64,000 nucleotides of DNA from IMG/VR virus record IMGVR_UViG_3300021964_009390, positions 124,001-188,000 of that record. One strand, given 5' to 3'. The position numbers and the translations under genes are program-made. This document shows, piece by piece, positions 19,991-62,358 of the stretch. The stretch's first letter is position 1. The number at the start of each line of letters is the position of its first letter. The notes beneath the pieces were generated by a model, which had not been told where the DNA came from, ran no database searches, and saw nothing but the letters and a program-made list of their open reading frames with translations.

Positions 19991-21049
19991 ATGGCCGAAT
20001 CACGTAACATTAAAGATTTACCACAGAGCGATTCCATCGCCGGTGGAGATTATTTTCTAATTGAGACTACTGGTGGAACACAATTGTTAGATTTTGACAA
20101 TTTTGTTATTGATCAGGACAACACCACATTCGCGGTTGATCTACAAACTAATGTCACGTCTCTATCCACACAAGTGGAAACTTTAACAGCAGCAGTCGAC
20201 TTGACCAACCCGGACAGTCCGATATATCTCGTGAACACATCTTTGAATGACTCGTTGAACTTGTTACAATCAAACTTGTATGGTGCCACGTTTGAAGCCA
20301 CACTGCAAGAGACACGCGCAAATTTAGTCAACGACCCGGTTTCAGACGAGAGTCGAGTACTAGACAACAATATGGAGACGTTGAGTGCCATGATTTTCGA
20401 CAGTGTGTATAGTCAGATAACCGCGGCGATCATACCTTTACGTGGTACTGCAGACATTACCAACCGCGCCAATCTCGTGTACAATGGTGGTACAACTTCC
20501 GCTCCGGAAGCGAATGATGGGGGTTTGTTAGGCGCGGTGCTGGACACTGCTTTGGCTAGTGTGGATGTATTCACGAGACAGCCTCAAGGCACCATAACTG
20601 TAGGTTCACCTAGCGTCACGTTCGCGCTAGAAATCCCGGCTAAATACACGGTGAATGCTGGTAGTTTACAGTTTGCAGTACAGTACAGTGGTGGTACAGA
20701 TGCCAAGACCAGGACTGACAATACACCTTACACAAACCCAGGCTTTTTTGCGGTTACAGATTTTGCCAAAGGGGAATTGAAAGATAATGGAGTCGAGTAC
20801 ACATGGACGATCGCTAGATTTGGTGGTAAGAGCTTTGATGATATGGTGGAATACACGTTAATAACTGACGCATCCGGTAATGCACCAACAATACCTATCG
20901 ATACAAACGGTGATGGTATAGATGATTCCACCGGACCGAATCCGGCGCATGATCCAAACAATGGTGGCCGGCAAATCTCTGTTGACGATAGAGAGTCCTT
21001 CCCATTCACTATAAATGCGCGAGTGGTCGCCGGGATTAGTTCAACTTAG
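19991..21049 (+). CDS. putative virion structural (fibre/baseplate) protein
   Basis: N-terminal IKDLP..SI.GGD.FLIET motif common in fibres; acidic and Thr-rich; DTNGDGIDD Ca-binding-like motif; TATAAATA 5 nt upstream. Confidence 0.55.
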   Translation: MAESRNIKDLPQSDSIAGGDYFLIETTGGTQLLDFDNFVIDQDNTTFAVDLQTNVTSLSTQVETLTAAVDLTNPDSPIYLVNTSLNDSLNLLQSNLYGATFEATLQETRANLVNDPVSDESRVLDNNMETLSAMIFDSVYSQITAAIIPLRGTADITNRANLVYNGGTTSAPEANDGGLLGAVLDTALASVDVFTRQPQGTITVGSPSVTFALEIPAKYTVNAGSLQFAVQYSGGTDAKTRTDNTPYTNPGFFAVTDFAKGELKDNGVEYTWTIARFGGKSFDDMVEYTLITDASGNAPTIPIDTNGDGIDDSTGPNPAHDPNNGGRQISVDDRESFPFTINARVVAGISST

Positions 21050-21261
21050 TTGATATGAAACTTTAAAGCTTTGTTGATTTTCTCTAGCAAGCTTTTCGGT
21101 CGTTGGCCAGATTCCATCAATCTTTTATATTCACTTTTGAACGCGTCAACAAATTCTTGGCTCAGCTCGAAATTCCGGGGGTAGAACTGTCTTCTGGTCA
21201 CTTTTATACTGTTGACATTCTCTTGGTACAGGTCTTGTATATTGTCGTCAAATTGTTTCAT
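21046..21261 (-). CDS. small late protein, CTS-like N-terminus
   Basis: MKQFDDNIQDLYQE; TATAAATA 6 nt upstream. Confidence 0.65.
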   Translation of the reverse strand: MKQFDDNIQDLYQENVNSIKVTRRQFYPRNFELSQEFVDAFKSEYKRLMESGQRPKSLLEKINKALKFHIN

Positions 21262-21280
21262 CTATAGTATTTATATAAAA

Positions 21281-21967
21281 CTACAACTTTCCTCCAGGGA
21301 ACACATCATCTGGCTTGATATTAAATTTAGCTAGTTCTTCCCAGTCTATATCACTATCCCCTTCATCATATGTATCACCATCGTCTGTTACGTACAAGCT
21401 AGCCTGTCGAATCCTCTCTCTAGGTGACCCTGACAGCTGTATCACTGCCGGGCGGTCGTCTGTATGAAAGAACACACTCGAGGGTTGCAGGGATTGGTAC
21501 TCGATCTGCCTCAAAATTCCGTCAACTTCTTGTATGTATCCCGGGTCGGTGTCTCTGGTTCCGTTGCTCTCGATACTAATCGTGTTATCATACGGTATAT
21601 AAAATACTATATCTATAAATTTCATACTCTCTTTCACCAGCGGTATACAACTCTCTATAAACTCTTCATCGATGTCACTCAACTGCTTGTCATATGAATA
21701 CAATGAATATGCTATGTTGTCTATGGGGCACCGGTCAAATATAACATGATCATCTCGTGTGTATTTCATTTGCTGATCCACCATGAAATCTAGAATGGTT
21801 TGTTGTGTCTCTTTGTTAGTCTCTTTGCTGTGATCTAAACCTTTTTCAGTTAAGATGTCTCTATATGATTCTGAGGGTTTATGATACACGCCTTCCCAAT
21901 TTTTTAAAAAATCATTCACAAATGTGCTTTTACCCACACACGCAGTTCCAGTTACAGCTACTCTCAT
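21281..21967 (-). CDS. P-loop nucleotide kinase (AAA_28/NadR-like)
   Basis: VTGTACVGKST, FDRCPIDN.AY, NGTRD. Confidence 0.75.
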   Translation of the reverse strand: MRVAVTGTACVGKSTFVNDFLKNWEGVYHKPSESYRDILTEKGLDHSKETNKETQQTILDFMVDQQMKYTRDDHVIFDRCPIDNIAYSLYSYDKQLSDIDEEFIESCIPLVKESMKFIDIVFYIPYDNTISIESNGTRDTDPGYIQEVDGILRQIEYQSLQPSSVFFHTDDRPAVIQLSGSPRERIRQASLYVTDDGDTYDEGDSDIDWEELAKFNIKPDDVFPGGKL

Positions 21968-21992
21968 AATATATATAATTAACTACAATTGA

Positions 21993-22136
21993 TTATTTTT
22001 CAACTTTAGACTTCAATGTGTATAGTATTTTAACCCCTTTAGGTATCTGTTTTTGAAACCATTTACGTACAGATTCTGATGGTGGTAGGCTCGACACTTT
22101 GATCAACACACTTTTAGGTTGCTCGTTACTTTTCAT
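21993..22136 (-). CDS. small hypothetical protein
   Basis: 47 aa from ATG 22136, overlapping the upstream stop. Confidence 0.45.
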   Translation of the reverse strand: MKSNEQPKSVLIKVSSLPPSESVRKWFQKQIPKGVKILYTLKSKVEK

Positions 22137-22503
22137 ATATGTCTCGATGCGCACGTTGAAATTTGCGCATGATGACCCCGGCCAGTGAGTTGGCTTCATT
22201 TTCTATTGGACTACCATCATCACCACACCCTGGTTTCAGACGACCTTGTTCATGTTGTTTAGCATGTACTAGTTCATGTGCTAAGCTTCTCAATATATCA
22301 ACTAGAGCCCGACCACCGCTCATCACTTTTATTTCCCTAGTCATAGGATTGAAACTCCCGGTCGTCATGTCCTGTTCAGGTCTGTCTACAAAACCTATTT
22401 CGCACGGGGTCTGCAGGTTTAAACTATGTTTACAGTACTTGATGAACCTGTCAAGTGTGTCCTTACCTTCATGTAGAAAAACATAGTTTTTAAAACTGTT
22501 CAT
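22126..22503 (-). CDS. HExxH zinc metallopeptidase-like protein
   Basis: LRSLAHELVHAKQ...IENEAN; start MNSFKNY 8 nt below TAAATA. Confidence 0.7.
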   Translation of the reverse strand: MNSFKNYVFLHEGKDTLDRFIKYCKHSLNLQTPCEIGFVDRPEQDMTTGSFNPMTREIKVMSGGRALVDILRSLAHELVHAKQHEQGRLKPGCGDDGSPIENEANSLAGVIMRKFQRAHRDIYEK

Positions 22504-24563: not shown

Positions 24564-25622
24564 TTAATTCCCAGTGAAATGTTTCGGATCAAATTTATAT
24601 CCTCTGTTATTGATGTTCTTACCAACATGACCGACATCATGCGCGATCTTGTCCCACATGTCATCTAGAGAGTCAAAACCATAAAAATCTTTAATTTTGT
24701 TTCGCTCAGCAATAGATTTTTCTACCCCGGTGGTGATTAAACGATTGATAAGCTCTTTAGCTTGATGAACATTTTTGAATGAGTCAAATTCGTACCATCT
24801 CCTATTCAAAGCTTGAGATATGTATGATAACCAGATGTATTTTGGGTCGACCATGGTCATGGTTTCTGCTGGTACCAGCTTGTCTCGCTCCGGTGGTATT
24901 CCGGCTTGACCAGGTTGACGAGTTTTATCATTAGGACCACGTTCTAACATATTTAAAAAATATCTATAATCACCACTACCGCTTGATGCTGACGATTGTG
25001 CAGAACTTACATCAATGTCACCGAAGGGTGTGGGTAGTCTTGTTGTATCAGGGTCTGCCAGAATTTCTAGTATATTTTTTGTTTTCTGTTCCGGACGAGC
25101 AGCAATCTCATTTCTCAATTTAGGAAATATTTTATGCGCGTCAATCATAGACTTTAACGCGGACAAACCTTGCTTTTCCGAATCATCAACATCAGACATG
25201 TAGTCTTTAAATGTACCAGGTTCAGACGATTCAGGCTCCTCAGCTGTTTCCGGTTTCTTAGGTGGTTCTGGTTTCTTGACCGGTTCAGGTTTCTTGACCG
25301 GTTTCTCATCTTTTCCACCTAGTATGTCTCGAATCGGGTGATCGTTAGATACATTCACATTAGTACTACTGATTGGTTTTTTAGGTTTGTAGTTGTCTAC
25401 AGTACCGTCTAGAGGTGCCAATTGTACCGGGAGGTTGGGTATAGTTGAATCCGGTCGTCGGCGAGGTTTTTTAGGTTCATCATCTTGCTCATCCTTGAAA
25501 CCACTTGTAAAATCTTTCCCAGCGGTTTTGATACGATCATAAGCTTTACCTAGCAATTTACCAGCATCTTTAGCAAACCCTTCAGTGTAGTTCTCGTATA
25601 TTGCCTGTTGATCACGGTCCAT
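24564..25622 (-). CDS. hypothetical late protein with Pro/Lys-rich linker
   Basis: 352 aa; MDRDQQAIYENYTE N-terminus; KPEPVK repeats. Confidence 0.7.
   Translation of the reverse strand: MDRDQQAIYENYTEGFAKDAGKLLGKAYDRIKTAGKDFTSGFKDEQDDEPKKPRRRPDSTIPNLPVQLAPLDGTVDNYKPKKPISSTNVNVSNDHPIRDILGGKDEKPVKKPEPVKKPEPPKKPETAEEPESSEPGTFKDYMSDVDDSEKQGLSALKSMIDAHKIFPKLRNEIAARPEQKTKNILEILADPDTTRLPTPFGDIDVSSAQSSASSGSGDYRYFLNMLERGPNDKTRQPGQAGIPPERDKLVPAETMTMVDPKYIWLSYISQALNRRWYEFDSFKNVHQAKELINRLITTGVEKSIAERNKIKDFYGFDSLDDMWDKIAHDVGHVGKNINNRGYKFDPKHFTGN
25264..25305. repeat. imperfect 18-bp coding tandem repeat (KPEPVK)
   Basis: GGTTCTGGTTTCTTGACC GGTTCAGGTTTCTTGACC GGTTTC. Confidence 0.7.
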
Positions 25623-25624: not shown

Positions 25625-26143
25625 TTACAGGTCCAGTGGACTTTTAATATTTCTAGGTGGTGGTGTATCATCATCATCGTCATCATCTAGATCTAGTATA
25701 CTTTTTTTACGTTTCGGTTTACTCTCGGATGGTTCATATTTAAACCTATCATCTTTAGATGGACCATCACCCTGTACATCGTATCCAGGGAATGCACTTT
25801 TGTATGAATTCAATATACCAGGATTGACTCTATCACAAAAATCAGAATTCCGAGTTATATATACTCCTTTTTTCATTTGTCTGAACATCCAAAGCAACTC
25901 CTGTGTGGCACATGGACAGCCATCAAGAGCTCTGTGGATAACCTCTCTCTTGACCACATCATCTTCTGTAACTAGCAGTGGACTGGCTAGAATCTCAGAA
26001 CCCATACGCTCCAGTCTCTCTTGAGAGATGTTCATGTCTGGGTCTTCCGGATTGTTCGTCTCCCCGGGTTGTGAGAAGCGGACTTCATTGACATGTTCAG
26101 CACCTTTTACTAGCTGTTTTATTTTACTAAGTTTATCATTCAT
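25625..26143 (-). CDS. hypothetical late protein
   Basis: Likely start MNDKLSK at 26143, below TAAATA at 26155-26160. Confidence 0.65.
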   Translation of the reverse strand: MNDKLSKIKQLVKGAEHVNEVRFSQPGETNNPEDPDMNISQERLERMGSEILASPLLVTEDDVVKREVIHRALDGCPCATQELLWMFRQMKKGVYITRNSDFCDRVNPGILNSYKSAFPGYDVQGDGPSKDDRFKYEPSESKPKRKKSILDLDDDDDDDTPPPRNIKSPLDL

Positions 26144-26153: not shown

Positions 26154-27809
26154 TTATTTAGTTGAACTGGCTGTAGAACCACTGGTACTACCTGCACCTA
26201 AACTAGGAGCTTGCTTTGCCGGTGATACACTACCTGCACCTAAACTCGGTGCTTGCGGCGACGGGGTGGGAACACCTGGTCCTAGATTTGGAGCTTGTTT
26301 GGCCGGTTTGCCCGGTTTTTTCGAACCACCACCTCCTCCACCTCCAGTCACGGGTGAGGGTTGAGTTGTTACAGGGGGTTTCGGAAGCGGTACTCTGCTA
26401 CCTCCATCACTTCCAACTCTGCTACCACCGGGTTTGCGTCCTGGTATTTCAACTGGTGTTTTTGGAAATTGTTCAGTGTCCGGTTCACCTTCAGGGGTAT
26501 TGGTCGGTGGTGGTGCCGGGTCTGCATCTGGTTCGGATTCTACTTCCGGGTCTGCTTCAGCATATTTTATGACAGCCATGGCCACTTCTTTGACTGATCG
26601 TGTATCCATCAAACCACTCTCTCTAGCTGCCAATCCAATGGCACCTAGACCTAGCATGGATACAGCTGATTTGTCTGGTTCAAGATTTAAAATTTTAGCC
26701 ATTACATTGTCGAATTCATCAGGAAACTCTGGTTCAAAAATTATAGGAGGAAAATAGTCTTTTTGAATTTTTCTGTAGATCTTCCAGCGACTAGTGTTGT
26801 CTCCTGGATCCTTTTTGTTCATTATACCATAAACACCTCCTATTTTGACACGACGTTCAATTTGATCTAACAATCTGTATCGTTCTAATAACGCCTTGAT
26901 CGCTGGATGGTTCATCAGTTTGCCTATAGTCAGTCTAAATCCAGGGTCACGCTTCTCATCATCTGTTTGAGCGCCAAACCCGTGTTCACCTTCATGTGAT
27001 TCTGGACTACCTTCTTCTGGTGGTTGCTCTCGCTTCATGCTACCGGGCTTGTATTTCGCTCGTTTTTCACGTTTTTTGTCACGTGACTGTCTCATTTTAC
27101 TCTTCCGGTTTTTTCTGGCTTCCTCTAGATTCTCTTCCGGTTTCAATTTGAAATCGTCTGGGTTGTTAGGGTCTTTATCACCTATGTTGGGTATGATAGT
27201 TTTGACTCGTAATGTTATTGGTCTGGAGTATGCATTGGAGCTGTTGGCTGAGTTTGCAGTACCATACAATACCAACAGTTGATTGTTGGGTATGTCTAGA
27301 TGGTCAAATTCAAAGTAATACGGATCCGCGTTGGCCATGCCAGTGTTAATTTTACCAAACTCACGTATTTTACCTGTCTCGTCCTCGTACTGACCTTGCC
27401 TGACGGGTAACACAGGTGCACCTTGTTTGTATATTTTCTTGAGTGATTTAAAGGTGTTCATACCACGTTGAACGCTTTTCCAGAAACCTTTTTGTTTTGC
27501 AGCGCCATGCACTCCAGTTCCTAGTTGGTCATGATGAGCATCCGGGTCTTTCAATCGGTCAGCAGTACCTGGGTTTTGTCTGTCCATCACCTCATCACTG
27601 GTGGTAGTCAATATGTTACCTTCCGCATCCTGAGGTGCGCGGATTTTTTGATCTCCAGTCTCACCACTAGGTTCTAATTGACCCTTCAGTTTGCTATCTT
27701 CTCTGTCGCTAGATATTTTTTGTTTTGCGTCATTAACTTCATCCTCGTCATAGCCGTATTTGTCTATACCCTCGACAAGATTTTTAATTTTCTTGAAATG
27801 TTTGTTCAT
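26154..27809 (-). CDS. large low-complexity late protein
   Basis: 551 aa; MNKHFKKIKNLVE N-terminus; Pro/Gly-rich tail with QAPSLGAG repeats. Confidence 0.7.
   Translation of the reverse strand: MNKHFKKIKNLVEGIDKYGYDEDEVNDAKQKISSDREDSKLKGQLEPSGETGDQKIRAPQDAEGNILTTTSDEVMDRQNPGTADRLKDPDAHHDQLGTGVHGAAKQKGFWKSVQRGMNTFKSLKKIYKQGAPVLPVRQGQYEDETGKIREFGKINTGMANADPYYFEFDHLDIPNNQLLVLYGTANSANSSNAYSRPITLRVKTIIPNIGDKDPNNPDDFKLKPEENLEEARKNRKSKMRQSRDKKREKRAKYKPGSMKREQPPEEGSPESHEGEHGFGAQTDDEKRDPGFRLTIGKLMNHPAIKALLERYRLLDQIERRVKIGGVYGIMNKKDPGDNTSRWKIYRKIQKDYFPPIIFEPEFPDEFDNVMAKILNLEPDKSAVSMLGLGAIGLAARESGLMDTRSVKEVAMAVIKYAEADPEVESEPDADPAPPPTNTPEGEPDTEQFPKTPVEIPGRKPGGSRVGSDGGSRVPLPKPPVTTQPSPVTGGGGGGGSKKPGKPAKQAPNLGPGVPTPSPQAPSLGAGSVSPAKQAPSLGAGSTSGSTASSTK
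26187..26305. repeat. imperfect coding repeat, about 42-bp unit (PAKQAP.LG.G)
   Basis: CTACCTGCACCTAAACT at 26187 and 26229, with a third degenerate copy. Confidence 0.6.
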
Positions 27810-28219
27810 GACATTAAAAACAGTTTACTGATTTTCTCAAATTCTTCTCGCTCCACACCCCGTTCCTTGAGAAACGCTTCCAAGTGTTGAATGTCTCCAG
27901 CGTTGATTATGTTGTAGTGTGACGCTTCATCACAATCGTCTCTTTTTACATCACTCAAATAGTTCATCACGAATTGCTTGAACATCTCGAATGTACCTCC
28001 GTGAGGTTCCACTTGATCCGGAGACAGTTCGATAGTGTTTTGGTCCATGTCTGGTGCCATCACCATCACACGTAACATTCCTTCGTTCTCTTCTATAATA
28101 TAACCTTCATACGGTAGAGAGTCAGACGGAGATTGATGATCACGTGGATCAGTTTTCATACGAACACGCTTGAGTTGTGTGTTGTTCAACGCGTTCTCTA
28201 CAACATGGTGAAATTTCAT
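27806..28219 (-). CDS. hypothetical late protein
   Basis: MKFHHVVE..; TAAATA 6 nt upstream. Confidence 0.7.
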   Translation of the reverse strand: MKFHHVVENALNNTQLKRVRMKTDPRDHQSPSDSLPYEGYIIEENEGMLRVMVMAPDMDQNTIELSPDQVEPHGGTFEMFKQFVMNYLSDVKRDDCDEASHYNIINAGDIQHLEAFLKERGVEREEFEKISKLFLMS

Positions 28220-28921: not shown

Positions 28922-29073
28922 AAACTATATTTGATAAAGTTGATACAAAATATTTAGATTGTACATCAGGTACATGTGAGCATGTAGCTCATAATTTTAA
29001 CGGTATACTGTTAGTCACTATTGCATTAGCAATCGTGACTGTAAAAGTATATCAATATTTAAACACCAGATAA
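28918..29073 (+). CDS. 51-aa putative membrane peptide (not in ORF track)
   Basis: ATGA overlap with folE stop; MKTIFDKVDTKYLDCTSGTCEHVAHNFNGILLVTIALAIVTVKVYQYLNTR. Confidence 0.55.
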   Translation: MKTIFDKVDTKYLDCTSGTCEHVAHNFNGILLVTIALAIVTVKVYQYLNTR

Positions 29074-29640
29074 TATACGTTTCACTTGTTCCGGATCTAC
29101 ATGTTCTGGTATATCTGAGACAAACACACTTGGATCGTCAATATTGTTACGTATATTAGATGCGCTGTAAGGTGTTCCGTCAGGCTTGTTTAATATATCA
29201 ACAGCTGTAAGTTGTGGGTCTAATACCTCCACGTTCAATTGTTTAGAATCTGCCCATTTCTTAGCACCAGACCATCTCTTCCAGTCATTGTCTTTCTTAC
29301 TCGCACCAAGTATCACACGTTTACCGTTCAAAGTTTCGAGTGCTAGATACGCAGCTCCTACCGGACTAGGTTGAGGGCTGATCTCTACAGTCACGTTGGG
29401 TAAGTTTGAAACATATAATTCAAATATTTTTTTAGACATTTCTGGAGTTATCACCTGGCCAGTCTTGGTCTTTCTCACACTCTTCTCACTAGGAGCAGAT
29501 ATCAACACCACAACATCATCAGCCATGCCAGAGTAGATGCTCACCATTTGATAATGACCTTTATGCGGTGGTTTGAAGCTTCCAGGTACTAAAGCAATGT
29601 CAGCGCCGGTAGTAACATAATCTTTAAAGCTAGGTATCAT
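29059..29640 (-). CDS. HxGH nucleotidyltransferase (cytidylyltransferase-like)
   Basis: PGSFKPPHKGH and YSASNIR signature. Confidence 0.85.
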   Translation of the reverse strand: MIPSFKDYVTTGADIALVPGSFKPPHKGHYQMVSIYSGMADDVVVLISAPSEKSVRKTKTGQVITPEMSKKIFELYVSNLPNVTVEISPQPSPVGAAYLALETLNGKRVILGASKKDNDWKRWSGAKKWADSKQLNVEVLDPQLTAVDILNKPDGTPYSASNIRNNIDDPSVFVSDIPEHVDPEQVKRILSGV

Positions 29641-30011
29641 TACATGTCTTTATGTAGTGACCAATCAACTGATCCTAGACCTTCGTTACGTATCAAATCA
29701 ATACCGGTCGCACGTACTCCTGGTTTACCTGGGTCCATATCATTTATCAAGAATCTAGGACCTCTCTCGATCTCCATGATCAGTCTATCATACACAATAT
29801 TATTCTCCGCTAGCTCTTTGACTGTATGATCTCTTAAATATTCCGGTCTGGCTGTAGTTAATATTATCATATGACCTAGATCTTTCCAATAATTCATTTT
29901 ATCGACAACTCCAGACAGGACTTTTGGTTTAGATGTCATGTACGTTTCAAACTTACGATACTCAAATAGAGTACCATCAATATCACAAAATATAGTGTTT
30001 TTCTTTTCCAT
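29640..30011 (-). CDS. HAD-family phosphatase (Pnkp-phosphatase-like)
   Basis: FCDIDGTL, LTTARP, IND. Confidence 0.8.
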   Translation of the reverse strand: MEKKNTIFCDIDGTLFEYRKFETYMTSKPKVLSGVVDKMNYWKDLGHMIILTTARPEYLRDHTVKELAENNIVYDRLIMEIERGPRFLINDMDPGKPGVRATGIDLIRNEGLGSVDWSLHKDM

Positions 30012-30014: not shown

Positions 30015-31283
30015 TTACCCAAATTTTTTATTAGGATCAAAATTGGCTTTACTAAACTCTAGTCTATCGACTAATTTCACTGCGTTACCTATATGATCAA
30101 CTGCGACAAAACCTTCCGGTTTAGTGACTTTGAAACTACCGTCTTCTTGCTCTATGAAGCTGTCCATTGCTCTTAAATTTGACAATTTGTTTACAAAGAT
30201 ATTTTTAATCTGCATCAATTTTAAATATAAATCGTACATCATCTGTATATTGGATGTGTTTTGCTCTAGAAAATGAACACCACGTTCCATAGCCTCACGC
30301 TTGCGTGTTTGTCCAGCTTCTGTTTTGAGTTTGTCTATTGCTGCAGTGGTTTTGTTGATATATCGCTCCATGAAACTGTTTGCAAATTTAACAGAATCTG
30401 CTTCGAATTCACCTTGAGTTTTTATCGCGCTGTTTATATGAGCTTTGAGTTCAACTTTTAAATCTGATATATGTTCTGTGTCATTTAAAAATTCAAACAC
30501 ATGTTTTATTTGCCAGAAATGATTCCTACATTCACGTATCTTTTCTGTTATGCTGGCTGACTCTTCTGGTGTCAAGTGTATCTGCCCACTCACATCTTTG
30601 AATGTTGCATCATCAAACCAAACGCTGCTATGCTCTGTGAGTCTGTTGGCTTTGAAACCAAATGTAGCTCCCATGTCATGTATTGTAGGACCACCGGTGT
30701 ACATGGTGTGAAACACAATACCCATGTCTGATTTCAATATTCGTTGGGCGAGCTCCGTGTCAGTTGGTACCGCATAAGAGATTGTGTTAGGTTTGAACAC
30801 TAGATGTTCCTTACCATCGATGGTGGCGCGCCTGATAGAATCTTTTGTATACAGCATGTCTCCTTGTAACACATAACCATCTATGTCGAGATGTTTCAAA
30901 CATTTAAACGCTGTTTTGAGTTTTTTTCTCAACATGCTTTTGTCTTGTTTCGAGTCACCACGCTTCACATCACCATGATTACGATTTATATCCGTGACAC
31001 GTTTGTTCATTTTGGGTATTTTTCCGAATACCGCTTTTGTACCTACGAAAAATCGTCCATCTGCTGGGTCAGTACCACAAAAAATTGCTGGTGCTCCATC
31101 CCATTTTGTTGTTATATCCACCGGATTGGTAGCATGACCTTTGAGTGTATCTAGTAGACCGGTGAACATAGAGAACGCTTGTTCTACACCGTTTTCACCT
31201 AGATTTATCAGTTCATCCTCGATGTGCTCTAGATGAGTGTTTTTACTCTCTACATGTAATACATACTCTTTGAATGTGAACAT
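30015..31283 (-). CDS. DUF6267-like protein with ATP-dependent ligase/capping nucleotidyltransferase motifs
   Basis: NTHLEHIED, KWDG (motif I), GDMLY (III), EGFV (IV), VKLVDR (V). Confidence 0.75.
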   Translation of the reverse strand: MFTFKEYVLHVESKNTHLEHIEDELINLGENGVEQAFSMFTGLLDTLKGHATNPVDITTKWDGAPAIFCGTDPADGRFFVGTKAVFGKIPKMNKRVTDINRNHGDVKRGDSKQDKSMLRKKLKTAFKCLKHLDIDGYVLQGDMLYTKDSIRRATIDGKEHLVFKPNTISYAVPTDTELAQRILKSDMGIVFHTMYTGGPTIHDMGATFGFKANRLTEHSSVWFDDATFKDVSGQIHLTPEESASITEKIRECRNHFWQIKHVFEFLNDTEHISDLKVELKAHINSAIKTQGEFEADSVKFANSFMERYINKTTAAIDKLKTEAGQTRKREAMERGVHFLEQNTSNIQMMYDLYLKLMQIKNIFVNKLSNLRAMDSFIEQEDGSFKVTKPEGFVAVDHIGNAVKLVDRLEFSKANFDPNKKFG

Positions 31284-31291: not shown

Positions 31292-32809
31292 TTATGCTCT
31301 CACACCAATACCAATACCTTTGTTACGTGAATCAACACCGGCATTCTGCACCACAATGTCTGGATTGTTCACAAGTTGCCTGTATACAGACAGCAATTGT
31401 TGACCGGCATCGTTGCTAGGGTCAAATTTGATGTTACTCGCGTTCATTGTAGTTGGGTTCAATACTAGTATTCTATCAAATTTATCAACTGATTGATAGG
31501 AAGTCGCTTGCAAAGCAGCTTGCAAGGTTTGTAATGTGTGTTGACCTAGTGATTTCCCGCGACTCACTTGCTTGCTTATGTTGGTGAGTTGATCTTTAAA
31601 CTCGACTTTGCGAAATATTTTCTCGAGCGCGGAAATTAATGAAGCTACAGAACCCGGGTCCATTTCCTCTGTTCTCATCTCTACAAATATCTCGGCTAGC
31701 TCCCGAGGTGTCATGCCCCAGTCATGATTGAACATGTACTGCGCGCTGTCTTGCCAGTTGTAATCCATACTGTCTGTGCTCAATCCGCTCAGCCTGTCTA
31801 GTCGATTGAATATATAGCTCATGTTTTTTACAAACGTCATTTTAGGTTGTAATGGGACCCCTTCTCCAAGTTTGTCATACCCTATCTGTAAATTGTTTTT
31901 TATTATGTCAATATTGATAGTACGTTTTGCATCTTGTAAGGATTCTAGATTTTTCAACAGCTGCTCGATTGGTCCGTTGAGTTCTAGAGTGTCTTCAGTC
32001 GGATTTTTTAGAAATTTGTTCTTGAACGTGTTTACATTTTTCAATGTCTCTTTCGCTTTAATTGACAGTTCTTTACGTATGATTGGTGTTTCTGCTTGTG
32101 AGAAGTGCTGACCGGTACCTCGGTTCACCAGCGTGTTGATATACTTGCTACCACCATCTCTACCGATGCCTTTGGTGTAATCGCTCTTACCTAGGCGACC
32201 ACCGGCTCCTTTTATCTCCAGTTCCATATCACCAATTCTTAGATCACCTACAGCACCTTTGACTGCGTTAGTGAACATGGTTAGACTAACTTCACCCGGA
32301 CCTACACTCACGGTGTTTATTTTGGGTTGTACTTTGAAGGTGAGTTCCTTGAACAATTGTTTGAAATTTTTAGTCAACTTGTGTGCCAGCGGGTCCACAG
32401 CATCATACAGGCTCCACACACCGGGTTTGTTCACATGTGACTCTAGTTTACCTAAAGAGCTTCCAGGGTTCTTTTTCTTCTCCACAAGCTTGTTCAACAC
32501 TTGTACATCAATGTCATATCCTAGAAATATCTCCAGTACCAACGTGTCGATCTCTGGTATCTCTTCCCATTGACCAAGTCGGAGCAACTGTTTCACTAGA
32601 TTTTCAACCCCACCATCAGCTTTGCTCAACACCAAACGTTTCAATTGCTGATAATAATCATCAGGTATGGCTCCTAGTTGCTCTTGAGTACCACCTTGAG
32701 GTACTCCGATTATTTCCACACTCTCGTTGACAGGTGTACGTGATTCTGCATACACATCTTTCAACGACTTGTATTTAAAAGGTTTCTTCGATGGTGGTAG
32801 ATAGTTCAT
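31292..32809 (-). CDS. PD-(D/E)xK nuclease-like late protein
   Basis: VGPGEVSL...GDLRIGDMELEIKG..GRL restriction-endonuclease-like motif. Confidence 0.55.
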   Translation of the reverse strand: MNYLPPSKKPFKYKSLKDVYAESRTPVNESVEIIGVPQGGTQEQLGAIPDDYYQQLKRLVLSKADGGVENLVKQLLRLGQWEEIPEIDTLVLEIFLGYDIDVQVLNKLVEKKKNPGSSLGKLESHVNKPGVWSLYDAVDPLAHKLTKNFKQLFKELTFKVQPKINTVSVGPGEVSLTMFTNAVKGAVGDLRIGDMELEIKGAGGRLGKSDYTKGIGRDGGSKYINTLVNRGTGQHFSQAETPIIRKELSIKAKETLKNVNTFKNKFLKNPTEDTLELNGPIEQLLKNLESLQDAKRTINIDIIKNNLQIGYDKLGEGVPLQPKMTFVKNMSYIFNRLDRLSGLSTDSMDYNWQDSAQYMFNHDWGMTPRELAEIFVEMRTEEMDPGSVASLISALEKIFRKVEFKDQLTNISKQVSRGKSLGQHTLQTLQAALQATSYQSVDKFDRILVLNPTTMNASNIKFDPSNDAGQQLLSVYRQLVNNPDIVVQNAGVDSRNKGIGIGVRA

Positions 32810-33282
32810 GTGTTTATATTAACATCACTATATTTTTTCATCAACTGTATAAATTTATTCAACATGCCTTTGCGGTTGTTCTCGTTGATTGAATTCATGG
32901 CATCATGCACACTCTCGATACGATCCTCGTTATCACCACGGGTCTGTTGATTGTTGATGATGCTCAAGATGTCCTGTTTGACTTGCTCTGCATTTTCTTG
33001 ATTTATCTCCGGTTGGTCTATCTTGCTCAAGGTGCTCAAGTCAGAATCTTCGATATTTATGACCAGAGCTTTGAGCAACAAGCGTACCAGTGTAACTTCT
33101 GCTGCTGGTGACAGATTGGCTGGTGGGCTAGCGTCTGGTTGTTCCCCAGCGCCTGGCGCTGGACTAGGAGGTGGTGCTCCCGGGGCTGGTGCTGGTGCAG
33201 CAGCTTCCGGTGGTGGTGCGCCTGCTTCTGGTTGCTCACTAATTCCAACTAGTTCGTTGATCAACGAGTTGAAATTTTTCAT
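32806..33282 (-). CDS. hypothetical late protein, Pro/Ala-rich
   Basis: MKNFNSLINE N-terminus. Confidence 0.7.
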   Translation of the reverse strand: MKNFNSLINELVGISEQPEAGAPPPEAAAPAPAPGAPPPSPAPGAGEQPDASPPANLSPAAEVTLVRLLLKALVINIEDSDLSTLSKIDQPEINQENAEQVKQDILSIINNQQTRGDNEDRIESVHDAMNSINENNRKGMLNKFIQLMKKYSDVNINT

Positions 33283-33551
33283 CAAGCTCCCATTTGTTTG
33301 GCTTTGTCTCTGCTGCTTTGAGCAGTAGATTGTGCTTTTTGAGTACGAGCACCGGCAAGTTCTTGACGTGCAGACTGAGCGTCAGTTTCCGCGTCATGAG
33401 CGGTGTCCTCAGCTTTGTCAGTTTGTTGTTTAGCTGCTTGGATCTCTTTCTCTTGATCAGCATTATCTTTCTCAGTCTCGTCTTCTTCCGCCTCGAGGGC
33501 GATGCCAAGTCGGTTGTATTGATCTTCTATGATTTGTTCGAAACGTTTCAT
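33282..33551 (-). CDS. small acidic coiled-coil late protein
   Basis: MKRFEQIIE; TAAATA 5 nt upstream. Confidence 0.7.
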   Translation of the reverse strand: MKRFEQIIEDQYNRLGIALEAEEDETEKDNADQEKEIQAAKQQTDKAEDTAHDAETDAQSARQELAGARTQKAQSTAQSSRDKAKQMGA

Positions 33552-34656: not shown

Positions 34657-34881
34657 TTACAGTACATTTTTAAGATTTCTACGCAATATGGTCAATTGCT
34701 CCCTTTTAACCTTACGTTTACTACGTTTTTTACGCTTAGTTACAGGTTTAAAACCAATAAAAGTAGGTATTCTCGCATCACCATCAGCATAACCACCACC
34801 AACATCACCAAATACACCCCCTGCACCGGCTACATTATCTTCATTGATAGTTTTAACGAAATAACTTTTAAATAGATTCAT
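34657..34881 (-). CDS. small basic late protein, CTS-like N-terminus
   Basis: MNLFKSYFVKTINE, YADGDARIP, basic tail. Confidence 0.65.
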   Translation of the reverse strand: MNLFKSYFVKTINEDNVAGAGGVFGDVGGGYADGDARIPTFIGFKPVTKRKKRSKRKVKREQLTILRRNLKNVL

Positions 34882-57841: not shown

Positions 57842-58891
57842 ATGTTGAGTTTGTCTGATCAGTATGTTGTAGAGAAGTTTTGCCAATATGGTGGCTATCC
57901 ATCATTCAACAAACGATCAAACGCATGGATGGCTGGGTGCCCTATGTGTAGGGAAGGGAAGAGCTGGGGTAAGAAGCGGAGGTTGTACTACAAAATTGAC
58001 AAAAACTATTTATTTTGTTTCAATTGCGGGTGGAAAGGAGGGACAATCGAGTTTATAAAACATGTGACTGGTATGTCATTCAATGAGATAATGAATGAAA
58101 ACAACAACTATGATACGTCTGATGTTGTAGAAGTAGATTCAAAGAAACCATCTATCACCACCCCTAGCGAGACACTACCAGCTGATTCAATAAATTTATT
58201 CGACGATTCACAAACCAGCTGGTGGCTATCACAGCGGTCTGAAGATAGTAAAGTCATCCACGATTGTATAGATTATATAAAGACGCGAAAACTAAATGTG
58301 GCCATAAACAAACCAATGTCAATATGGGTCAGCTTGAGCGATTATACACATAAAAACAGACTGACATTGCCGTTCTATTCAACAGATGGAAAAATTATAT
58401 TCTATCAAACCAGAGCCATGTATAAAGATGAATCCAAGCCCAAGTATTTGAGTAAATCCGGAAGCGAAAAGAGTATTTTTAATATAAACAATATCGTGTC
58501 AGATGTTGACAACATATATTTATTTGAAGGACCAATAGATAGCTGTTTTGTCAAAAATGGTGTAGCAGTTGCCGGTGTTACAAATGGCCCGAGCCAAGAT
58601 TTGAACAGCTTGCAGCAGCAACAATTGAACGATTATAGATTGTATGGTAAAACTTGGGTGCTAGATTCACAATGGTTGGATGACACCAGTTTGCATAAGA
58701 CAAAAATGTTAGCAGATCAAGGTGAGCATGTGTTCATATGGCCTGAATCTATTGGTAGATCGTATAAGGATTTAAATGATTTGTGTACGAACAAAAATTT
58801 ACCAGGTATAGGTCACAAATTTGTAGACAGACACACCTACACGGGTATGAAAGCCAAGCTGATGCTCAAGACGATCAGCTCTAGTCGTTAG
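57842..58891 (+). CDS. gp61: DNA primase gp61
   Basis: CPMC...CFNCG Zn finger, KY, EGPIDS, KDLND. Confidence 0.92.
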   Translation: MLSLSDQYVVEKFCQYGGYPSFNKRSNAWMAGCPMCREGKSWGKKRRLYYKIDKNYLFCFNCGWKGGTIEFIKHVTGMSFNEIMNENNNYDTSDVVEVDSKKPSITTPSETLPADSINLFDDSQTSWWLSQRSEDSKVIHDCIDYIKTRKLNVAINKPMSIWVSLSDYTHKNRLTLPFYSTDGKIIFYQTRAMYKDESKPKYLSKSGSEKSIFNINNIVSDVDNIYLFEGPIDSCFVKNGVAVAGVTNGPSQDLNSLQQQQLNDYRLYGKTWVLDSQWLDDTSLHKTKMLADQGEHVFIWPESIGRSYKDLNDLCTNKNLPGIGHKFVDRHTYTGMKAKLMLKTISSSR

Positions 58892-59303
58892 AAATTAAAT
58901 AGCTTTTGAGACTCTCTGATAAGCTTCTCAAATCTTGAGCGATTCTACCAATTTTCTTAGTTTCACTCCGGGCAATATCGTCAAATATGGTGTCACATGG
59001 AGCATTGTTTATTTGAGAGTTGAGAGAACTCTCACCTAATCCGTTCAAATAATCTATAAATTCTTCAATCTTAACAACCCATCCTTCGATTTGACCAGCG
59101 TATTCAGCGTTTTGTTGTTTTTGCAACTCCTCCGCAGGGTTACCTCCAGGACTTGCCATCGGCGCGCCTTCAGGTGCCGGCTCTACATCTAACATCGATG
59201 GGTCCGTACCAGGGTCCATTTGATTTTGTGCTGCATCTGCATCAGTCAATTCTTCCTGTTCTGTAACTAATGTTGTAAAAAATCGGTCAGTAAATGTTTT
59301 CAT
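58881..59303 (-). CDS. acidic late protein, CTS-like N-terminus
   Basis: MKTFTDRFFTTLVTE; TATAAATA 9 nt upstream. Confidence 0.7.
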   Translation of the reverse strand: MKTFTDRFFTTLVTEQEELTDADAAQNQMDPGTDPSMLDVEPAPEGAPMASPGGNPAEELQKQQNAEYAGQIEGWVVKIEEFIDYLNGLGESSLNSQINNAPCDTIFDDIARSETKKIGRIAQDLRSLSESLKSYLISND

Positions 59304-59312: not shown

Positions 59313-59334
59313 TATTTATACTCCGATATAAATA
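59313..59334. promoter_or_regulatory. back-to-back late-type TATAAATA promoters
   Basis: TAAATA at 59313-18 (-) and 59329-34 (+), 9 and 7 nt before the divergent ATGs. Confidence 0.7.
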
Positions 59335-60222: not shown

Positions 60223-60611
60223 AAAATATTGAAGCTGATGGAAAATCTAGTAGCAAGTTTCCACCCGTCGGTGAGAAACATAAAGTAACTACCACCCGAG
60301 ATATACAAAATATAAACAATAATTTCTGGAATGAACAAAGTGTAGATTTACATTTGTGTTACAAAAAAGGTACAGCATATGCCAACAACAGTAACAAAAA
60401 ATCATCCATCAATTTAATTACAGAGTTGCTAGAATTGTTGAAACATCAATATAAGGAATCTACAACACAACCGGATATAATAGACATTATTTTTAATAAC
60501 ATAAAAAACGACATGACTATATTGGAAAAAATCACCGACGATGTTGACAAAAATTGTATATTGGCTACAATACAAGGATACACTTTGGGGTGTTTAAAAA
60601 AATATGAATAA
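60219..60611 (+). CDS. hypothetical protein
   Basis: Coupled ORF. Confidence 0.6.
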   Translation: MKNIEADGKSSSKFPPVGEKHKVTTTRDIQNINNNFWNEQSVDLHLCYKKGTAYANNSNKKSSINLITELLELLKHQYKESTTQPDIIDIIFNNIKNDMTILEKITDDVDKNCILATIQGYTLGCLKKYE

Positions 60612-60867
60612 AGAAAATTACGGAGACACGTTTGAATTAAAAAATGGTGAAGAAGTTGAAATGAACCAAGATGAAGTGGCGAGATGGTGTTGTTTGATAG
60701 AGGCTATAGATGTGGTGAGCAAGAAAGGAACGCAAGTAGGGATGGACATGACTAAATCCTCATGGATAAAGCCAATAGCTTTTCAGAAATACATAGACGA
60801 GAGAATGGATACTATGGTAGAAGAGATACAACGAGATAAAGATAATCACCAAATAAATATTTACTGA
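60604..60867 (+). CDS. hypothetical protein
   Basis: Coupled ORF. Confidence 0.6.
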   Translation: MNKENYGDTFELKNGEEVEMNQDEVARWCCLIEAIDVVSKKGTQVGMDMTKSSWIKPIAFQKYIDERMDTMVEEIQRDKDNHQINIY

Positions 60868-61226
60868 TGTTATACATAGTAGGTACACAAGTAGACACTA
60901 GAAATACACAACAACCAACTGGTCAGCTAGTGAACCGGAATGCGCGTCGAAAGGTGACGTGGCTTCCACCAGACGATATCTGGGAACTAGCCTCAATCCG
61001 CCGGTCTAGAGAAACAAACGATGTAGAGTATAGCTTCATGTCATGGAAAACAAAAGAATTCAAAACAGTACCATTCCCGGACTGTGGAGCTGCTGATCAG
61101 GCAATTGCATCCGCACGTAACGAGCAAATTGTTGATGACGATGATAGGTCCAAGGTGGATATGGAAGAGAAGACTAGTCACTTAAATGATATTCTCAACC
61201 CAAAACCAAAACAAAGAGGTCAATAG
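60867..61226 (+). CDS. hypothetical protein
   Basis: Coupled ORF; TAAATA 7 nt upstream. Confidence 0.6.
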   Translation: MLYIVGTQVDTRNTQQPTGQLVNRNARRKVTWLPPDDIWELASIRRSRETNDVEYSFMSWKTKEFKTVPFPDCGAADQAIASARNEQIVDDDDRSKVDMEEKTSHLNDILNPKPKQRGQ

Positions 61227-62008
61227 TAATCACCATATACTGCATCCCCTCCCCCGTAATCACCGTAGTCAAATATATCATTAGATGTAATTGTAGACCA
61301 AGTGTCTGTGTTTTGTAGATACGGATCATATATACTATCTTCAGTCACTTGTGTACTACCACCCTCCGGAGTGATATTATTCTCGAAACTAAAATCGAAA
61401 CGTTTGGCTTTCAATAACCATATGTAATGCCCCATCAACGGGTTAATCTTTTGAATGTCTTGATCTAACCGTTCTGTTATTTCATATACACTACCATCTC
61501 GAGGAAACACTCGATCATTACCATATTCCGACAATCGAAAAATATCTCCGGATTTAGGCTCAATAACACCTTGCTTCGCGTCACCAGTACCACCCATATT
61601 AGAATAAAACGTGTCTATGTGTATATATGCAGTTACTTCATCATCACTATTGATACCAAACTGACTCAACGTTAGAGCATTTTCATTCAACTCTATATAC
61701 ATAATCATTTTAATCGGGTCACCAAATGTTTGGTCTGAATCCTCACCGTACAATGGATCGTAATTGCCTAGATCATCACTAGCGGATTGATATAAAATTT
61801 CAGTACCATACATGCAAATCTGCTCTTTAAACCATTTGCTATAATTACCACGTTCATTGGCTGTGTTATTTTTATCTAGAAACCTGGCGCAACCGTTGTT
61901 AAATTTAAACACATTGTCTAAGGGAACCACTCCGGAACCTATGTCTATACAGTCCGGTTTTTTGGTTACAAACGGTTTGGGACAAAATTCATCTGGGTAG
62001 TTGCTCAT
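61220..62008 (-). CDS. gp14: neck protein (T4 gp14-like)
   Basis: EQI.MYG...Y...DPLYGED...F......MYI...LSQFGI...DE......P..GD...YEI. Confidence 0.7.
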   Translation of the reverse strand: MSNYPDEFCPKPFVTKKPDCIDIGSGVVPLDNVFKFNNGCARFLDKNNTANERGNYSKWFKEQICMYGTEILYQSASDDLGNYDPLYGEDSDQTFGDPIKMIMYIELNENALTLSQFGINSDDEVTAYIHIDTFYSNMGGTGDAKQGVIEPKSGDIFRLSEYGNDRVFPRDGSVYEITERLDQDIQKINPLMGHYIWLLKAKRFDFSFENNITPEGGSTQVTEDSIYDPYLQNTDTWSTITSNDIFDYGDYGGGDAVYGDYY

Positions 62009-62358
62009 GCTCGCTGCAATACAAAATTATTAATGGTATCGTCCCAGTACATACGTATACCAGTTTTACCTAACATGCGTGGAGATTTTGTAGTGATGTT
62101 TCTGATATTATACTTGTTCTGGATGTATTTTAGGTCTTGTTCACCTACCGGTATTTTTTCAAAAGAATCTGAGTTTCTGAGCCGCTCGATTTTAGGGTTC
62201 AATGTAGGATCCACGCGATCTCTATCCGGCACTAGATTTTGACTACCTTGCCGCCATGGAGTGGCACCCATCCGCGCCGACTGTTGTCGGGTGGTGGTTT
62301 TACCAACAACCTGCTTCGCAGTGTTGAAATACGTTTCGAATAATGTGTCAAACTTCAC
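62005..62358 (-). CDS. small late protein, CTS-like N-terminus
   Basis: MKFDTLFE; TAAATA 7 nt upstream of GTG. Confidence 0.65.
   Translation of the reverse strand: MKFDTLFETYFNTAKQVVGKTTTRQQSARMGATPWRQGSQNLVPDRDRVDPTLNPKIERLRNSDSFEKIPVGEQDLKYIQNKYNIRNITTKSPRMLGKTGIRMYWDDTINNFVLQRA

What the first reader, a model, noticed from the sequence alone, without database searches (positions are those of the whole stretch)
21046..62358. About 15 late genes with capsid-targeting-like N-termini: a packaged protein payload
Seen: MKQFDDNIQDLYQE (21261), MNSFKNYVFLHE (22503), MDRDQQAIYENYTE (25622), MNKHFKKIKNLVE (27809), MKFHHVVE (28219), MIPSFKDYV (29640), MFTFKEYVLHVE (31283), ..KSLKDVYAE (32809), MKNFNSLINE (33282), MKRFEQIIE (33551), MNLFKSYFVKTINE (34881), MNRDNHLIFE (47101), MKTFTDRFFTTLVTE (59303) and MKFDTLFE (62358). 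All are on the minus strand, mostly under TAAATA promoters, and otherwise unrelated. Known: T4 internal proteins carry a roughly 10-aa CTS (MKTYQEFIAE) removed by gp21 after (L/I)xE and are injected with the DNA. Inference: a much larger injected payload than T4's, including enzymes that act before transcription begins.
Basis: partly seen in the sequence, partly recalled or inferred. Interest (0 to 1): 0.76.

Follow-up and report, generated by a model that had tools for sequence, protein, structure and literature searches.

The report
Capsid-targeting tags on phage cargo proteins
An uncultured marine T4-like phage puts short N-terminal tags, like the ones T4 uses to load proteins into its head, on about twenty otherwise unrelated late proteins, including an RNA-ligase-like enzyme, so it probably ships a larger set of ready-made proteins than T4, though no virion data exist.

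Summary
All 14 N-termini are present at the stated coordinates on the minus strand. The window is part of a 222-kb T4-like phage from estuary and marine metagenomes. The phage encodes a gp21-type prohead protease, a scaffold and a gp23-like capsid protein that keeps the LxE cleavage site. The list holds two kinds of tag. Class B resembles T4 MKTYQEFIAE: an aromatic residue near position 4, hydrophobic residues at 7 and 8, and a Glu 8 to 15 residues in. It is 3.3-fold enriched at N-termini but low in information, so about 4 or 5 of the 14 may be chance. Class A (Mx[DNK][KR]Dxx[LA]I[FWY]E[SNA][YF]) was not recognised as separate. It heads 7 unrelated proteins here, two of them in the list, and at least 14 unrelated families in public viral contigs. 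Tags are 3.5 times commoner behind TAAATA boxes. Orthologues keep them while the cargo varies. Cyanophage copies of the same enzymes lack them. One tagged protein is RNA-ligase-like and sits beside phosphatase and nucleotidyltransferase genes. Targeting into the prohead and cleavage are well supported by inference. Retention in the virion, injection and "acting before transcription" are untested, and some acidic members may be scaffold parts. Verdict: a new variant of a known kind.

The parts
33282..33551 (-). 89-aa acidic orphan protein. Class B tag MKRFEQIIE|D. First gene of a late run.
   Evidence: Sequence read. TAAATA box at 33557-33562, 5 nt before the ATG. No Pfam or PHROG match.
32806..33282 (-). 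158-aa acidic, Pro/Ala-rich orphan protein. Class B tag MKNFNSLINE|L, which matches T4 positions 4, 7, 8 and 10.
   Evidence: Sequence. Orthologues in G001-G003 start MKFNKLLE, MGFKEKLNE and MRFNDKISKYMSLFNE.
31292..32809 (-). 505-aa protein with a weak, displaced tag (KSLKDVYAE|S ending at residue 22). Leads point to a restriction-endonuclease-like fold.
   Evidence: Sequence. The G003 orthologue starts MSKQQNKKPYKPLTDIYLKE. Atlas leads. The equivalent Melnitz gene starts MQGFKTFLSE.
30015..31283 (-). 422-aa DUF6267, an RNA-ligase-like adenylyltransferase. Class B tag MFTFKEYVLHVE|S lies in front of the conserved core, which starts KNTHLEH.
   Evidence: PF19782 at 341 bits. KWDG is invariant. 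AF2 model with pLDDT 85.6; residues 1-14 are below 50. The top 8 VIA matches are all RNA ligases, Z 7.0-8.9. TAAATA box at 31289-31294, 5 nt before the ATG. The leader varies by clade and is absent in the cyanophage copy.
29640..30011 (-). 123-aa HAD phosphatase resembling polynucleotide-kinase phosphatase. It has no tag and sits between the two tagged enzymes.
   Evidence: phrog_1238, phrog_415 and phrog_505. N-terminus MEKKNTIFCDIDGT.
29059..29640 (-). 193-aa cytidylyltransferase/NMNAT-like nucleotidyltransferase. Tag MIPSFKDYV has no Glu, so it may be targeted but not cleaved, or the tag may be decayed.
   Evidence: PF01467 from residue 17. Orthologues start MKPFKQFLTE and MTFRKFFLE. The Melnitz copy starts MKKFSEIIE and the cyanophage copy has no leader. 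Fusions of DUF6267 with PF01467 exist.
27806..28219 (-). 137-aa acidic orphan protein. Tag MKFHHVVE|N.
   Evidence: Sequence. TAAATA box at 28226-28231, 6 nt before the ATG. Orthologues start MAFHSLLSE and MLNKLIE.
26154..27809 (-). 551-aa orphan protein. Tag MNKHFKKIKNLVE|G, of moderate strength.
   Evidence: Sequence. No family match. No orthologue in G001-G003.
25625..26143 (-). 172-aa orphan protein, not in the finding. It starts MNDKLSKIKQLVKGAE, which resembles the start of its upstream neighbour. A weak candidate.
   Evidence: Sequence. TAAATA box at 26155-26160. No Pfam match.
24564..25622 (-). 352-aa orphan protein. Class A tag MDRDQQAIYE|NY.
   Evidence: Unrelated to the other class A proteins beyond about residue 20.
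22126..22503 (-). 125-aa protein. Class B tag MNSFKNYVFLHE|G. Faint metallopeptidase-like hits.
   Evidence: Sequence. TAAATA box at 22512-22517. PF06114 at E=0.017, below its cut-off.
21046..21261 (-). 71-aa protein. Tag MKQFDDNIQDLYQE|N, of moderate strength.
   Evidence: Sequence. TAAATA box at 21268-21273. Orthologues start MRFNNEYDKVLE|S and MLFDKNYNFIME|S.
34657..34881 (-). 74-aa basic protein. Tag MNLFKSYFVKTINE|D. Probably a homologue of T4 gp61.1.
   Evidence: Sequence. The G001 copy reads MITFKQFVMNEENVAGDGG. T4 gp61.1 reads MKTFKEFIKEDMVAGDSGG. The pairwise E-value is only 0.012.
45710..47101 (-). 463-aa acidic orphan protein. Class A tag MNRDNHLIFE|SF. It shares its promoter context with the main roughly 300-aa tagged family in public viral contigs.
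   Evidence: TAAATA box at 47111-47116 within AATAAATAATTCAAG, as in most public viral copies.
58881..59303 (-). 140-aa very acidic protein. Tag MKTFTDRFFTTLVTE|Q.
   Evidence: Sequence. TAAATA box at 59313-59318. Orthologues start MSSFVSKFTTLLE|A, MSLFANHFNSILE|A and MELFKKAFSLSLE|A.
62005..62358 (-). 117-aa basic ORF with a GTG start, (V)KFDTLFE|T. The weakest member.
   Evidence: Sequence. TAAATA box at 62366-62371. The G001 homologue aligns only from residue 43.

Best explanation
The tags are propeptides that act as capsid-targeting sequences of the T4 type. During late infection, each protein carrying the 8-22-residue leader is built into the scaffolding core of the prohead. The gp21-type serine protease then cuts after the Glu of a [LIVF]-x-E site. 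The mature part stays in the head with the DNA and enters the next cell with it.

Two tag classes exist. Class B is the direct counterpart of T4 MKTYQEFIAE. Class A (MNKDxxLIFEAY in relatives) is a second tag specific to this clade. In its largest family a second [LIV]xE-A-P site follows about 10 residues later.

The cargo is hypervariable. It includes an RNA-ligase-like enzyme and a nucleotidyltransferase from an RNA-repair-like gene set, plus many acidic orphan proteins.

What is shown:
- the motifs exist, are tied to the N-terminus, and are conserved;
- they are modular, sitting on unrelated proteins;
- they associate with TAAATA boxes;
- the genome has the protease and scaffold, and the capsid protein keeps its cleavage site.

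What is inferred: binding to the core, cleavage, retention in the head, ejection, and what the cargo does.
For: - The phage is T4-like and has the head machinery: Peptidase_S77 at 109 bits, phrog_207 protease and phrog_237 scaffold, 21 T4 core genes found by BLAST, and T4 gp23 FLTE|AE aligning with CLNE|AN here.
- T4 reference N-termini read from NC_000866 all carry [LI]xE within 6-13 residues.
- The published determinants are residues 4 and 7 for targeting and 8 and 10 for processing (PMC9026906). In late genes of this clade, Phe at position 4 is 11% against 6% in other genes, aliphatic at position 8 is 36% against 26%, and Glu at position 10 is 12% against 6%.
- Tags occur in 28 of 199 genes directly behind a TAAATA box against 35 of 785 others (odds ratio 3.5, p=5.6e-6).
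- Class A is tied to the N-terminus and sits on unrelated proteins, and its codons differ between copies.
- The exact string MNKDxxLIFEAY heads 65 ORFs in public viral contigs. The 63 long enough to compare fall into at least 14 unrelated families.
- Orthologues keep the tags.
- Leaders sit outside the conserved domain, are predicted flexible, and are absent from cyanophage copies.
Against: - There are no virion proteomes or expression data. The clade has no cultured member in the phage collection searched: the best capsid-protein identity is 34%.
- Class B carries little information. About 5 hits per genome are expected by chance, and motif discovery did not sharpen it.
- Class A conservation runs past the presumed P1 Glu ([SNA][YF]), which a simple cleavage site does not explain.
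- Many candidates have a net charge of -10 to -30, unlike the basic T4 internal proteins.
- The complex prediction of protease with tag gave no answer.
- No gp55 or gp33 homologue was found by simple BLAST, so reading TAAATA as a late promoter rests on analogy and on its position.
Confidence: 0.65

Rival explanations
1. Most tagged proteins are parts of the prohead core or scaffold, like T4 gp67, gp68 and gp22. They are targeted and cut, but then degraded and expelled, so they are not an injected payload.
For: Many candidates are small and very acidic (w33551, w33282, w59303, g60516, g101373), as T4 gp67 is. T4 core proteins carry the same kind of N-terminal [LI]xE. The genome has no recognisable gp67 or gp68 next to the protease.
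Against: Enzymes such as the RNA-ligase-like protein and the nucleotidyltransferase carry the tag. Cargo content turns over fast between relatives, which is not typical of scaffold parts. The candidates do not have an excess of internal [LI]xE sites as T4 gp22 does (13 against 4.9 expected).
Confidence: 0.2
2. The resemblance is chance. N-termini often form short amphipathic helices rich in K, F, I and E, and an AT-rich genome with leaderless late mRNAs may favour AT-rich first codons.
For: Expectation-maximisation on N-termini spread into a generic pattern. The T4-derived rule also hits proteins that are clearly not cargo, such as the clamp loader. In T4 itself the excess of [LI]xE at N-termini (46 against 28) is larger than the number of known substrates.
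Against: Class A is far beyond chance and recurs on at least 14 families. Residues with AT-rich codons are not enriched at late N-termini. The signal is position-specific and 3.5 times commoner behind TAAATA boxes. Orthologues keep the pattern. This rival probably does account for 4 or 5 of the 14.
Confidence: 0.07
3. The tags, class A above all, direct proteins somewhere other than the head (tail, baseplate, membrane or a host factor), or act as a shared regulatory or degradation signal.
For: Class A conservation covers both sides of the Glu. Its binding partner is unknown. The complex test was silent.
Against: The invariant I-[FWY]-E fits the [LI]xE specificity of gp21. In the main family a second invariant Glu in [LIV]xE-A-P follows within about 10 residues, as expected of a propeptide. 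The tags have no hydrophobic signal-peptide character.
Confidence: 0.08

Closest known systems
T4 internal proteins IPI-III and Alt with their capsid targeting sequence (Mullaney and Black 1996, as reviewed in PMC9026906 and PMC3012670)
   Same: A leader of about 10 residues on otherwise unrelated proteins, with an aromatic residue at position 4, hydrophobic residues at 7 and 8, and Glu at the cut site. Both have a gp21-type protease and late genes. The best copy in this genome, MKTFKQFFYE (outside the window, genome coordinate 56378), matches MKTYQEFIAE at 6 of 10 positions.
   Different: About 20 tagged genes here against 4 cargo genes in T4. Spacing to the Glu is variable (8-15 residues). 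There is a second tag class with a different sequence. Many cargo proteins are acidic rather than basic. The cargo includes an RNA-ligase-like enzyme. None of it has been tested experimentally.
The hypervariable internal-protein locus of T-even phages (Repoila et al. 1994, cited in PMC3012670)
   Same: A run of diverse genes that share only the leader, with content differing between relatives (window 24564-33551 against G001 168-176 kb).
   Different: In this clade the tags are conserved at the protein level with differing codons. Tagged genes are also scattered over the genome.
Ejection proteins of phiKZ-like giant phages such as SPN3US (PMC5694885, PMC7411985)
   Same: Many head-internal proteins are processed after Glu by a gp21-related protease, and the payload is large.
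   Different: Their cleavage motif is A/S-x-E, and most propeptides are over 100 residues long. Here P3 is L, I, V or F and the leaders are 8-22 residues.
The N-terminal packaging signal of phage P1 DarB (PMC9024508)
   Same: An N-terminal segment is sufficient to direct anti-defence cargo into a myovirus head.
   Different: The P1 signal is about 30 residues, is not known to be cut after Glu, and belongs to an unrelated head assembly system.

Membership tests
T4-type capsid targeting sequence (gp21-processed N-terminal propeptide) | The motif lies within the first 10-20 residues, starting at the initiator Met. | tested here: met
   Seven of the 8 class A strings in six frames lie 8-12 residues after a start codon.
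T4-type capsid targeting sequence (gp21-processed N-terminal propeptide) | Aromatic or hydrophobic residues at positions 4 and 7, the targeting determinants. | tested here: inconclusive
   Met, within a shift of one residue, by about 9 of the 14 and by 17 genes genome-wide against 5.2 expected. Not met by class A, which has D/K/R there.
T4-type capsid targeting sequence (gp21-processed N-terminal propeptide) | L or I at P3 and Glu at P1. | tested here: met
   Strict [LI]xE in 8 of the 14 and in all 7 class A genes. V, H or Y at P3 in five others. No Glu in w29640. Enrichment over internal windows.
T4-type capsid targeting sequence (gp21-processed N-terminal propeptide) | The genome encodes a gp21-family protease and a scaffolding core. 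| tested here: met
   PF03420 at 109 bits. phrog_207 at 195 bits and phrog_237 at E=7e-7. The LxE site of the capsid protein is kept.
T4-type capsid targeting sequence (gp21-processed N-terminal propeptide) | The same leader sits on otherwise unrelated proteins. | tested here: met
T4-type capsid targeting sequence (gp21-processed N-terminal propeptide) | Late expression together with head genes. | tested here: inconclusive
   TAAATA boxes lie 5-9 nt upstream, and tags are 3.5 times commoner behind them. No usable RNA data exist.
T4-type capsid targeting sequence (gp21-processed N-terminal propeptide) | The leader is sufficient to package a reporter, is removed in the virion, and the cargo is ejected. 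| not testable with these tools
   This needs an isolate or a surrogate host-phage system.
phiKZ-type ejection-protein propeptides | A small residue (A, S or G) at P3 of the x-E cleavage site. | tested here: not met
   P3 here is L, I, V, F, H or Y. The motif definition comes from PMC5694885.
ATP-dependent RNA ligase superfamily (for w30015-31283, DUF6267) | Motif I, KxDG, with the adenylated lysine. | tested here: met
   K60 W61 D62 G63 are invariant in 30 sequences.
ATP-dependent RNA ligase superfamily (for w30015-31283, DUF6267) | The nucleotidyltransferase fold. | tested here: inconclusive
   The top 8 VIA matches are all RNA ligases, at Z 7.0-8.9 with 179-204 aligned residues. That Z range is what the tool's own note calls middling, and Foldseek E-values are no better than 0.03.

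The most novel reading that the evidence does not exclude
Class A (MNKDxxLIFEAY) is a second, previously undescribed capsid-targeting tag. A large clade of uncultured aquatic T4-like phages uses it to load a fast-changing set of at least 14 cargo families. Together with the T4-type tag, it lets these phages deliver a pre-made RNA-repair kit and DNA-mimic-like acidic proteins against host defences at the moment of injection.
Probability: 0.35. Interest if true: 0.75.

Novelty: new variant of a known kind. Interest (0 to 1): 0.6.

Why it matters
Proteins injected with phage DNA are the first line against host defences, and outside T4, P1 and the phiKZ group few are known. A short tag readable from sequence would allow cargo to be listed directly from metagenomes. 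It would point to a stock of unstudied candidate anti-defence proteins: about 20 per genome here, and at least 14 families for one exact tag string. It would also offer new packaging tags for engineering protein delivery by phages. The cultured relative Melnitz carries four tagged genes, so the prediction can be tested directly.

Tried and rejected
- Megablast of the locus against cultured phages found no match.
- BLOSUM scoring of N-termini against the T4 tag gave only a weak excess (6 against 1.8 at score 16 or more).
- My expectation-maximisation motif search spread into a generic pattern that also absorbed the N-termini of sulfotransferase paralogues.
- Pfam and PHROG scans left nearly all candidates as orphans.
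- Atlas look-ups gave only leads.
- I tested whether cargo avoids internal [LI]xE sites. It shows no difference from other genes (ratio 1.17 against 1.14), and the T4 controls show the test cannot discriminate.
- Protease plus tag complex prediction returned no answer, which is not evidence either way.
- A degenerate DNA pattern for class A in relatives was no better than its control.
- RNA runs hold the locus only faintly, so I did not lay reads.
- The rival that tags arise from AT-rich first codons was rejected. The rival that they are a DNA-level recombination cassette was rejected for class A because codons differ between copies.
- Gene calls are my own crude longest-ORF calls, so gene counts are approximate.

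Full report
**Where the window lies.** The window is bases 124001-188000 of a single 222,461-bp viral contig with 39% G+C. It was recovered from estuary and marine metagenomes. The phage is T4-like:
- BLAST finds 21 T4 core genes, including gp4, gp13, gp14, gp17, gp18, gp19, gp21, gp23, gp32, gp41, gp43, gp44, gp46, gp47, gp61, UvsW and UvsX.
- The head genes include a Peptidase_S77 gp21-type prohead protease (phrog_207), a scaffold (phrog_237) and a gp23-like capsid protein.
- No cultured phage in the collection searched is close: the best capsid-protein identity is 34%, to cyanophages.
- At least 600 stretches in public viral contigs (IMG/VR) encode capsid proteins related to this one; the 80 best are 64-88% identical.
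- I fetched three long relatives for comparison: G001 at 230 kb, G002 at 162 kb and G003 at 140 kb.

**The observation.** All 14 N-termini read as quoted, on the minus strand. Eight have a TAAATA box 5-9 nt before the start codon. Five more sit downstream in the same minus-strand runs. The two runs read as follows, where P marks a TAAATA box:
- P-33551, 33282, 32809, then P-31283, 30011, 29640.
- P-28219, 27809, then P-26143, 25622.

Once the first 20 residues are removed, no pair among the 23 candidates I assembled is similar at E<0.01. Three caveats apply. ORF 62358 starts with GTG and its N-terminus is not conserved in the one relative that has the gene. At 32809 the motif is displaced by 14 residues. 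ORF 29640 has no Glu.

**Two tag classes.** Scanning the whole genome showed that the list mixes two things.

*Class A* is M-x-[DNK]-[KR]-D-x-x-[LA]-I-[FWY]-E-[SNA]-[YF].
- The string I[FWY]E[SNA][YF] occurs 8 times in all six frames, and 7 of those lie 8-12 residues after the initiator Met of a called gene.
- The seven proteins are 141-463 aa long and share nothing beyond about residue 20. Only two of them (25622 and 47101) were in the finding.
- Their codons differ between copies (GAC/GAT, CTG/TTA/CTA, TGG/TTT/TTC/TAC), so the conservation is at the protein level.
- The same tag occurs in G001-G003, mostly as MNKD[ST][HK]LIFEAY.
- An exact-pattern scan of IMG/VR found it on 64 stretches.
- The 65 ORFs it heads are mostly preceded by AATAAATAATTCAAG. 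The 63 long enough to compare fall into at least 14 unrelated families.
- In the largest family (about 300 aa) a second Glu, at residue 22, is invariant within [LIV]-x-E-A-P.
- An AlphaFold model of that family gives the tag as a low-confidence helix (residues 3-15), then a disordered linker (16-28), ahead of the folded part.

*Class B* resembles T4 MKTYQEFIAE. I read the T4 sequence from the T4 record for ipII and ipIII.
- Published work locates targeting at residues 4 and 7 and processing at residues 8 and 10. Asp at position 10 blocks cleavage but not targeting (PMC9026906).
- A rule built from those determinants hits 17 of 297 N-termini here against 5.2 expected from internal windows (p=2.4e-5), and 50 of 984 over four genomes (p=7e-11).
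- T4 itself gives 12 hits against 5.4 expected, so the rule carries about 5 false hits per genome.
- Unsupervised expectation-maximisation did not yield a sharp motif.
- Class B is therefore real as a set but weak for any single gene.
- The strongest members in the window are 22503, 28219, 31283, 33282, 33551, 34881 and 59303. Moderate members are 21261, 27809 and 29640. Weak members are 32809 and 62358.
- Outside the window, the genes at genome coordinates 56378 (MKTFKQFFYE) and 29161 (MSIKTFKQYVE) also belong.

**Tests of the interpretation.**
1. The a-priori T4 cleavage consensus [LI]xE, with Glu at residues 7-16, is found in 44 of 280 N-termini against 26.9 expected. The excess is similar in each relative.
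2. It is not. [LI]xE occurs in 59 of 193 genes directly behind a TAAATA box against 110 of 791 others (odds ratio 2.7, p=1.6e-7). The tags proper occur in 28 of 199 against 35 of 785 (odds ratio 3.5, p=5.6e-6).
3. The signal is position-specific. In late genes Phe at position 4 is 11% against 6% in others, aliphatic at position 8 is 36% against 26%, and Glu at position 10 is 12% against 6%. Residues with AT-rich codons are not enriched, which argues against a codon-composition artefact.
4. Orthologues in G001-G003 keep the pattern while the sequence drifts. For 59303 they read MSSFVSKFTTLLE|A, MSLFANHFNSILE|A and MELFKKAFSLSLE|A. For 29640 they read MKPFKQFLTE and MTFRKFFLE.
5. Protease specificity appears to be kept. 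The T4 gp23 maturation site FLTE|AEIGG aligns with CLNE|ANVAGG in this capsid protein, and the protease itself starts MAFKLLVE.
6. The leader is an add-on.
   - In DUF6267 (w30015-31283) the conserved domain begins at KNTHLEH.
   - Among the 120 nearest homologues, 113 have that motif within their first 90 residues. They carry leaders of 10-49 residues that differ by clade.
   - The cultured T4-like phage Melnitz has tagged copies of this gene and three neighbours.
   - The cyanophage ACG-2014i copies of the ligase-like gene and the cytidylyltransferase start directly with the domain.
   - The AlphaFold model gives residues 1-14 a pLDDT below 50.

**What the cargo is.** Almost all candidates are orphans.
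- DUF6267 has an invariant KWDG. Its top eight structural matches are all RNA ligases: the Naegleria nick-sealing ligase, the trypanosome editing ligase, T4 Rnl2, fungal tRNA ligases and archaeal ligases, at Z 7.0-8.9. Foldseek alone was weak.
- It is followed by a HAD phosphatase resembling the polynucleotide-kinase phosphatase and by a cytidylyltransferase-like protein.
- Natural fusions of DUF6267 with PF01467 exist.
- The upstream 505-aa protein has restriction-endonuclease-like leads.
- Together these look like an RNA-repair gene set, two or three members of which carry tags.
- Many other candidates are strongly acidic, with net charge -10 to -30. That fits either DNA-mimic-type anti-restriction proteins or degradable core parts such as T4 gp67.
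- The cargo varies between relatives: most window candidates have no orthologue in G001-G003.

**Verdict.** It is likely (about 0.65) that most of these leaders are T4-type prohead-targeting and cleavage propeptides. Retention in the virion, injection and action before transcription are inference only. For a subset, the rival that they are scaffold parts stands at about 0.2. The gene count is about 20, or about 7% of genes, against four non-structural cargo genes in T4. The principle is known from T4, the T-even internal-protein locus, the phiKZ group and P1 DarB (PMC3012670, PMC9026906, PMC5694885, PMC9024508). Three things are new:
- the scale of tagging in an uncultured aquatic T4-like clade;
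- the distinct class A tag;
- tagged nucleic-acid enzymes.

**What led nowhere.** The protease-tag complex prediction gave no answer. The cleavage-site avoidance test was uninformative, even in T4. No useful RNA runs exist.

Noticed in passing
whole window and genome, e.g. window 31289-31294, 33557-33562, 28226-28231: TAAATA sits 5-9 nt (mode 5) before the ATG of about 50 genes in each of four genomes of the clade. If it acts like the T4 late promoter, transcription would start at or next to the start codon, giving leaderless late mRNAs. The sheath and tube genes instead have the box 18-24 nt upstream plus an AGGAG-like ribosome site.
   Followed up: partly
window 23010-24525 (-), 28277-28921 (+), 47139-47849 (+): QueE-like, QueD-like, GTP cyclohydrolase and QueC-like genes. 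This is a 7-deazaguanine pathway, which suggests modified phage DNA.
   Followed up: partly
window 29059-32809 (-): A gene set that looks like RNA repair, under a late promoter: a nuclease-like 505-aa protein, the RNA-ligase-like DUF6267, a phosphatase resembling polynucleotide-kinase phosphatase, and a cytidylyltransferase-like protein. DUF6267 fused to the cytidylyltransferase domain occurs elsewhere. The pair is conserved in T4-like cyanophages and in Melnitz.
   Followed up: partly
window 34657-34881 (-); T4 NC_000866 18966-19130: T4 gp61.1, an unstudied 54-aa protein, starts MKTFKEFIKEDMVAGDSGG, close to the IPII/IPIII tag. The 74-aa window ORF and a G001 ORF share both the tag and the following VAG-GG stretch, so this small protein may be a conserved, unrecognised head cargo of T4-like phages.
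   Followed up: partly
genome 5766-8228 (-), outside the window, next to the capsid gene: An 820-aa ClpA/B-like ATP-dependent protease ATPase (phrog_4871, 813 bits) encoded beside the head genes.
   Followed up: no
window 1-16617 (-): A long minus-strand block of genes whose N-termini look like glycosyltransferases, sulfotransferases and GDP-mannose dehydratase. It may serve sugar modification of DNA or of the virion surface. I did not scan it.
   Followed up: no
L180 (IMGVR_UViG_GVMAG-S-ERX555967-69_000001): One contig carrying the class A tag is filed under a giant-virus bin name. It is probably a phage fragment binned wrongly.
   Followed up: no
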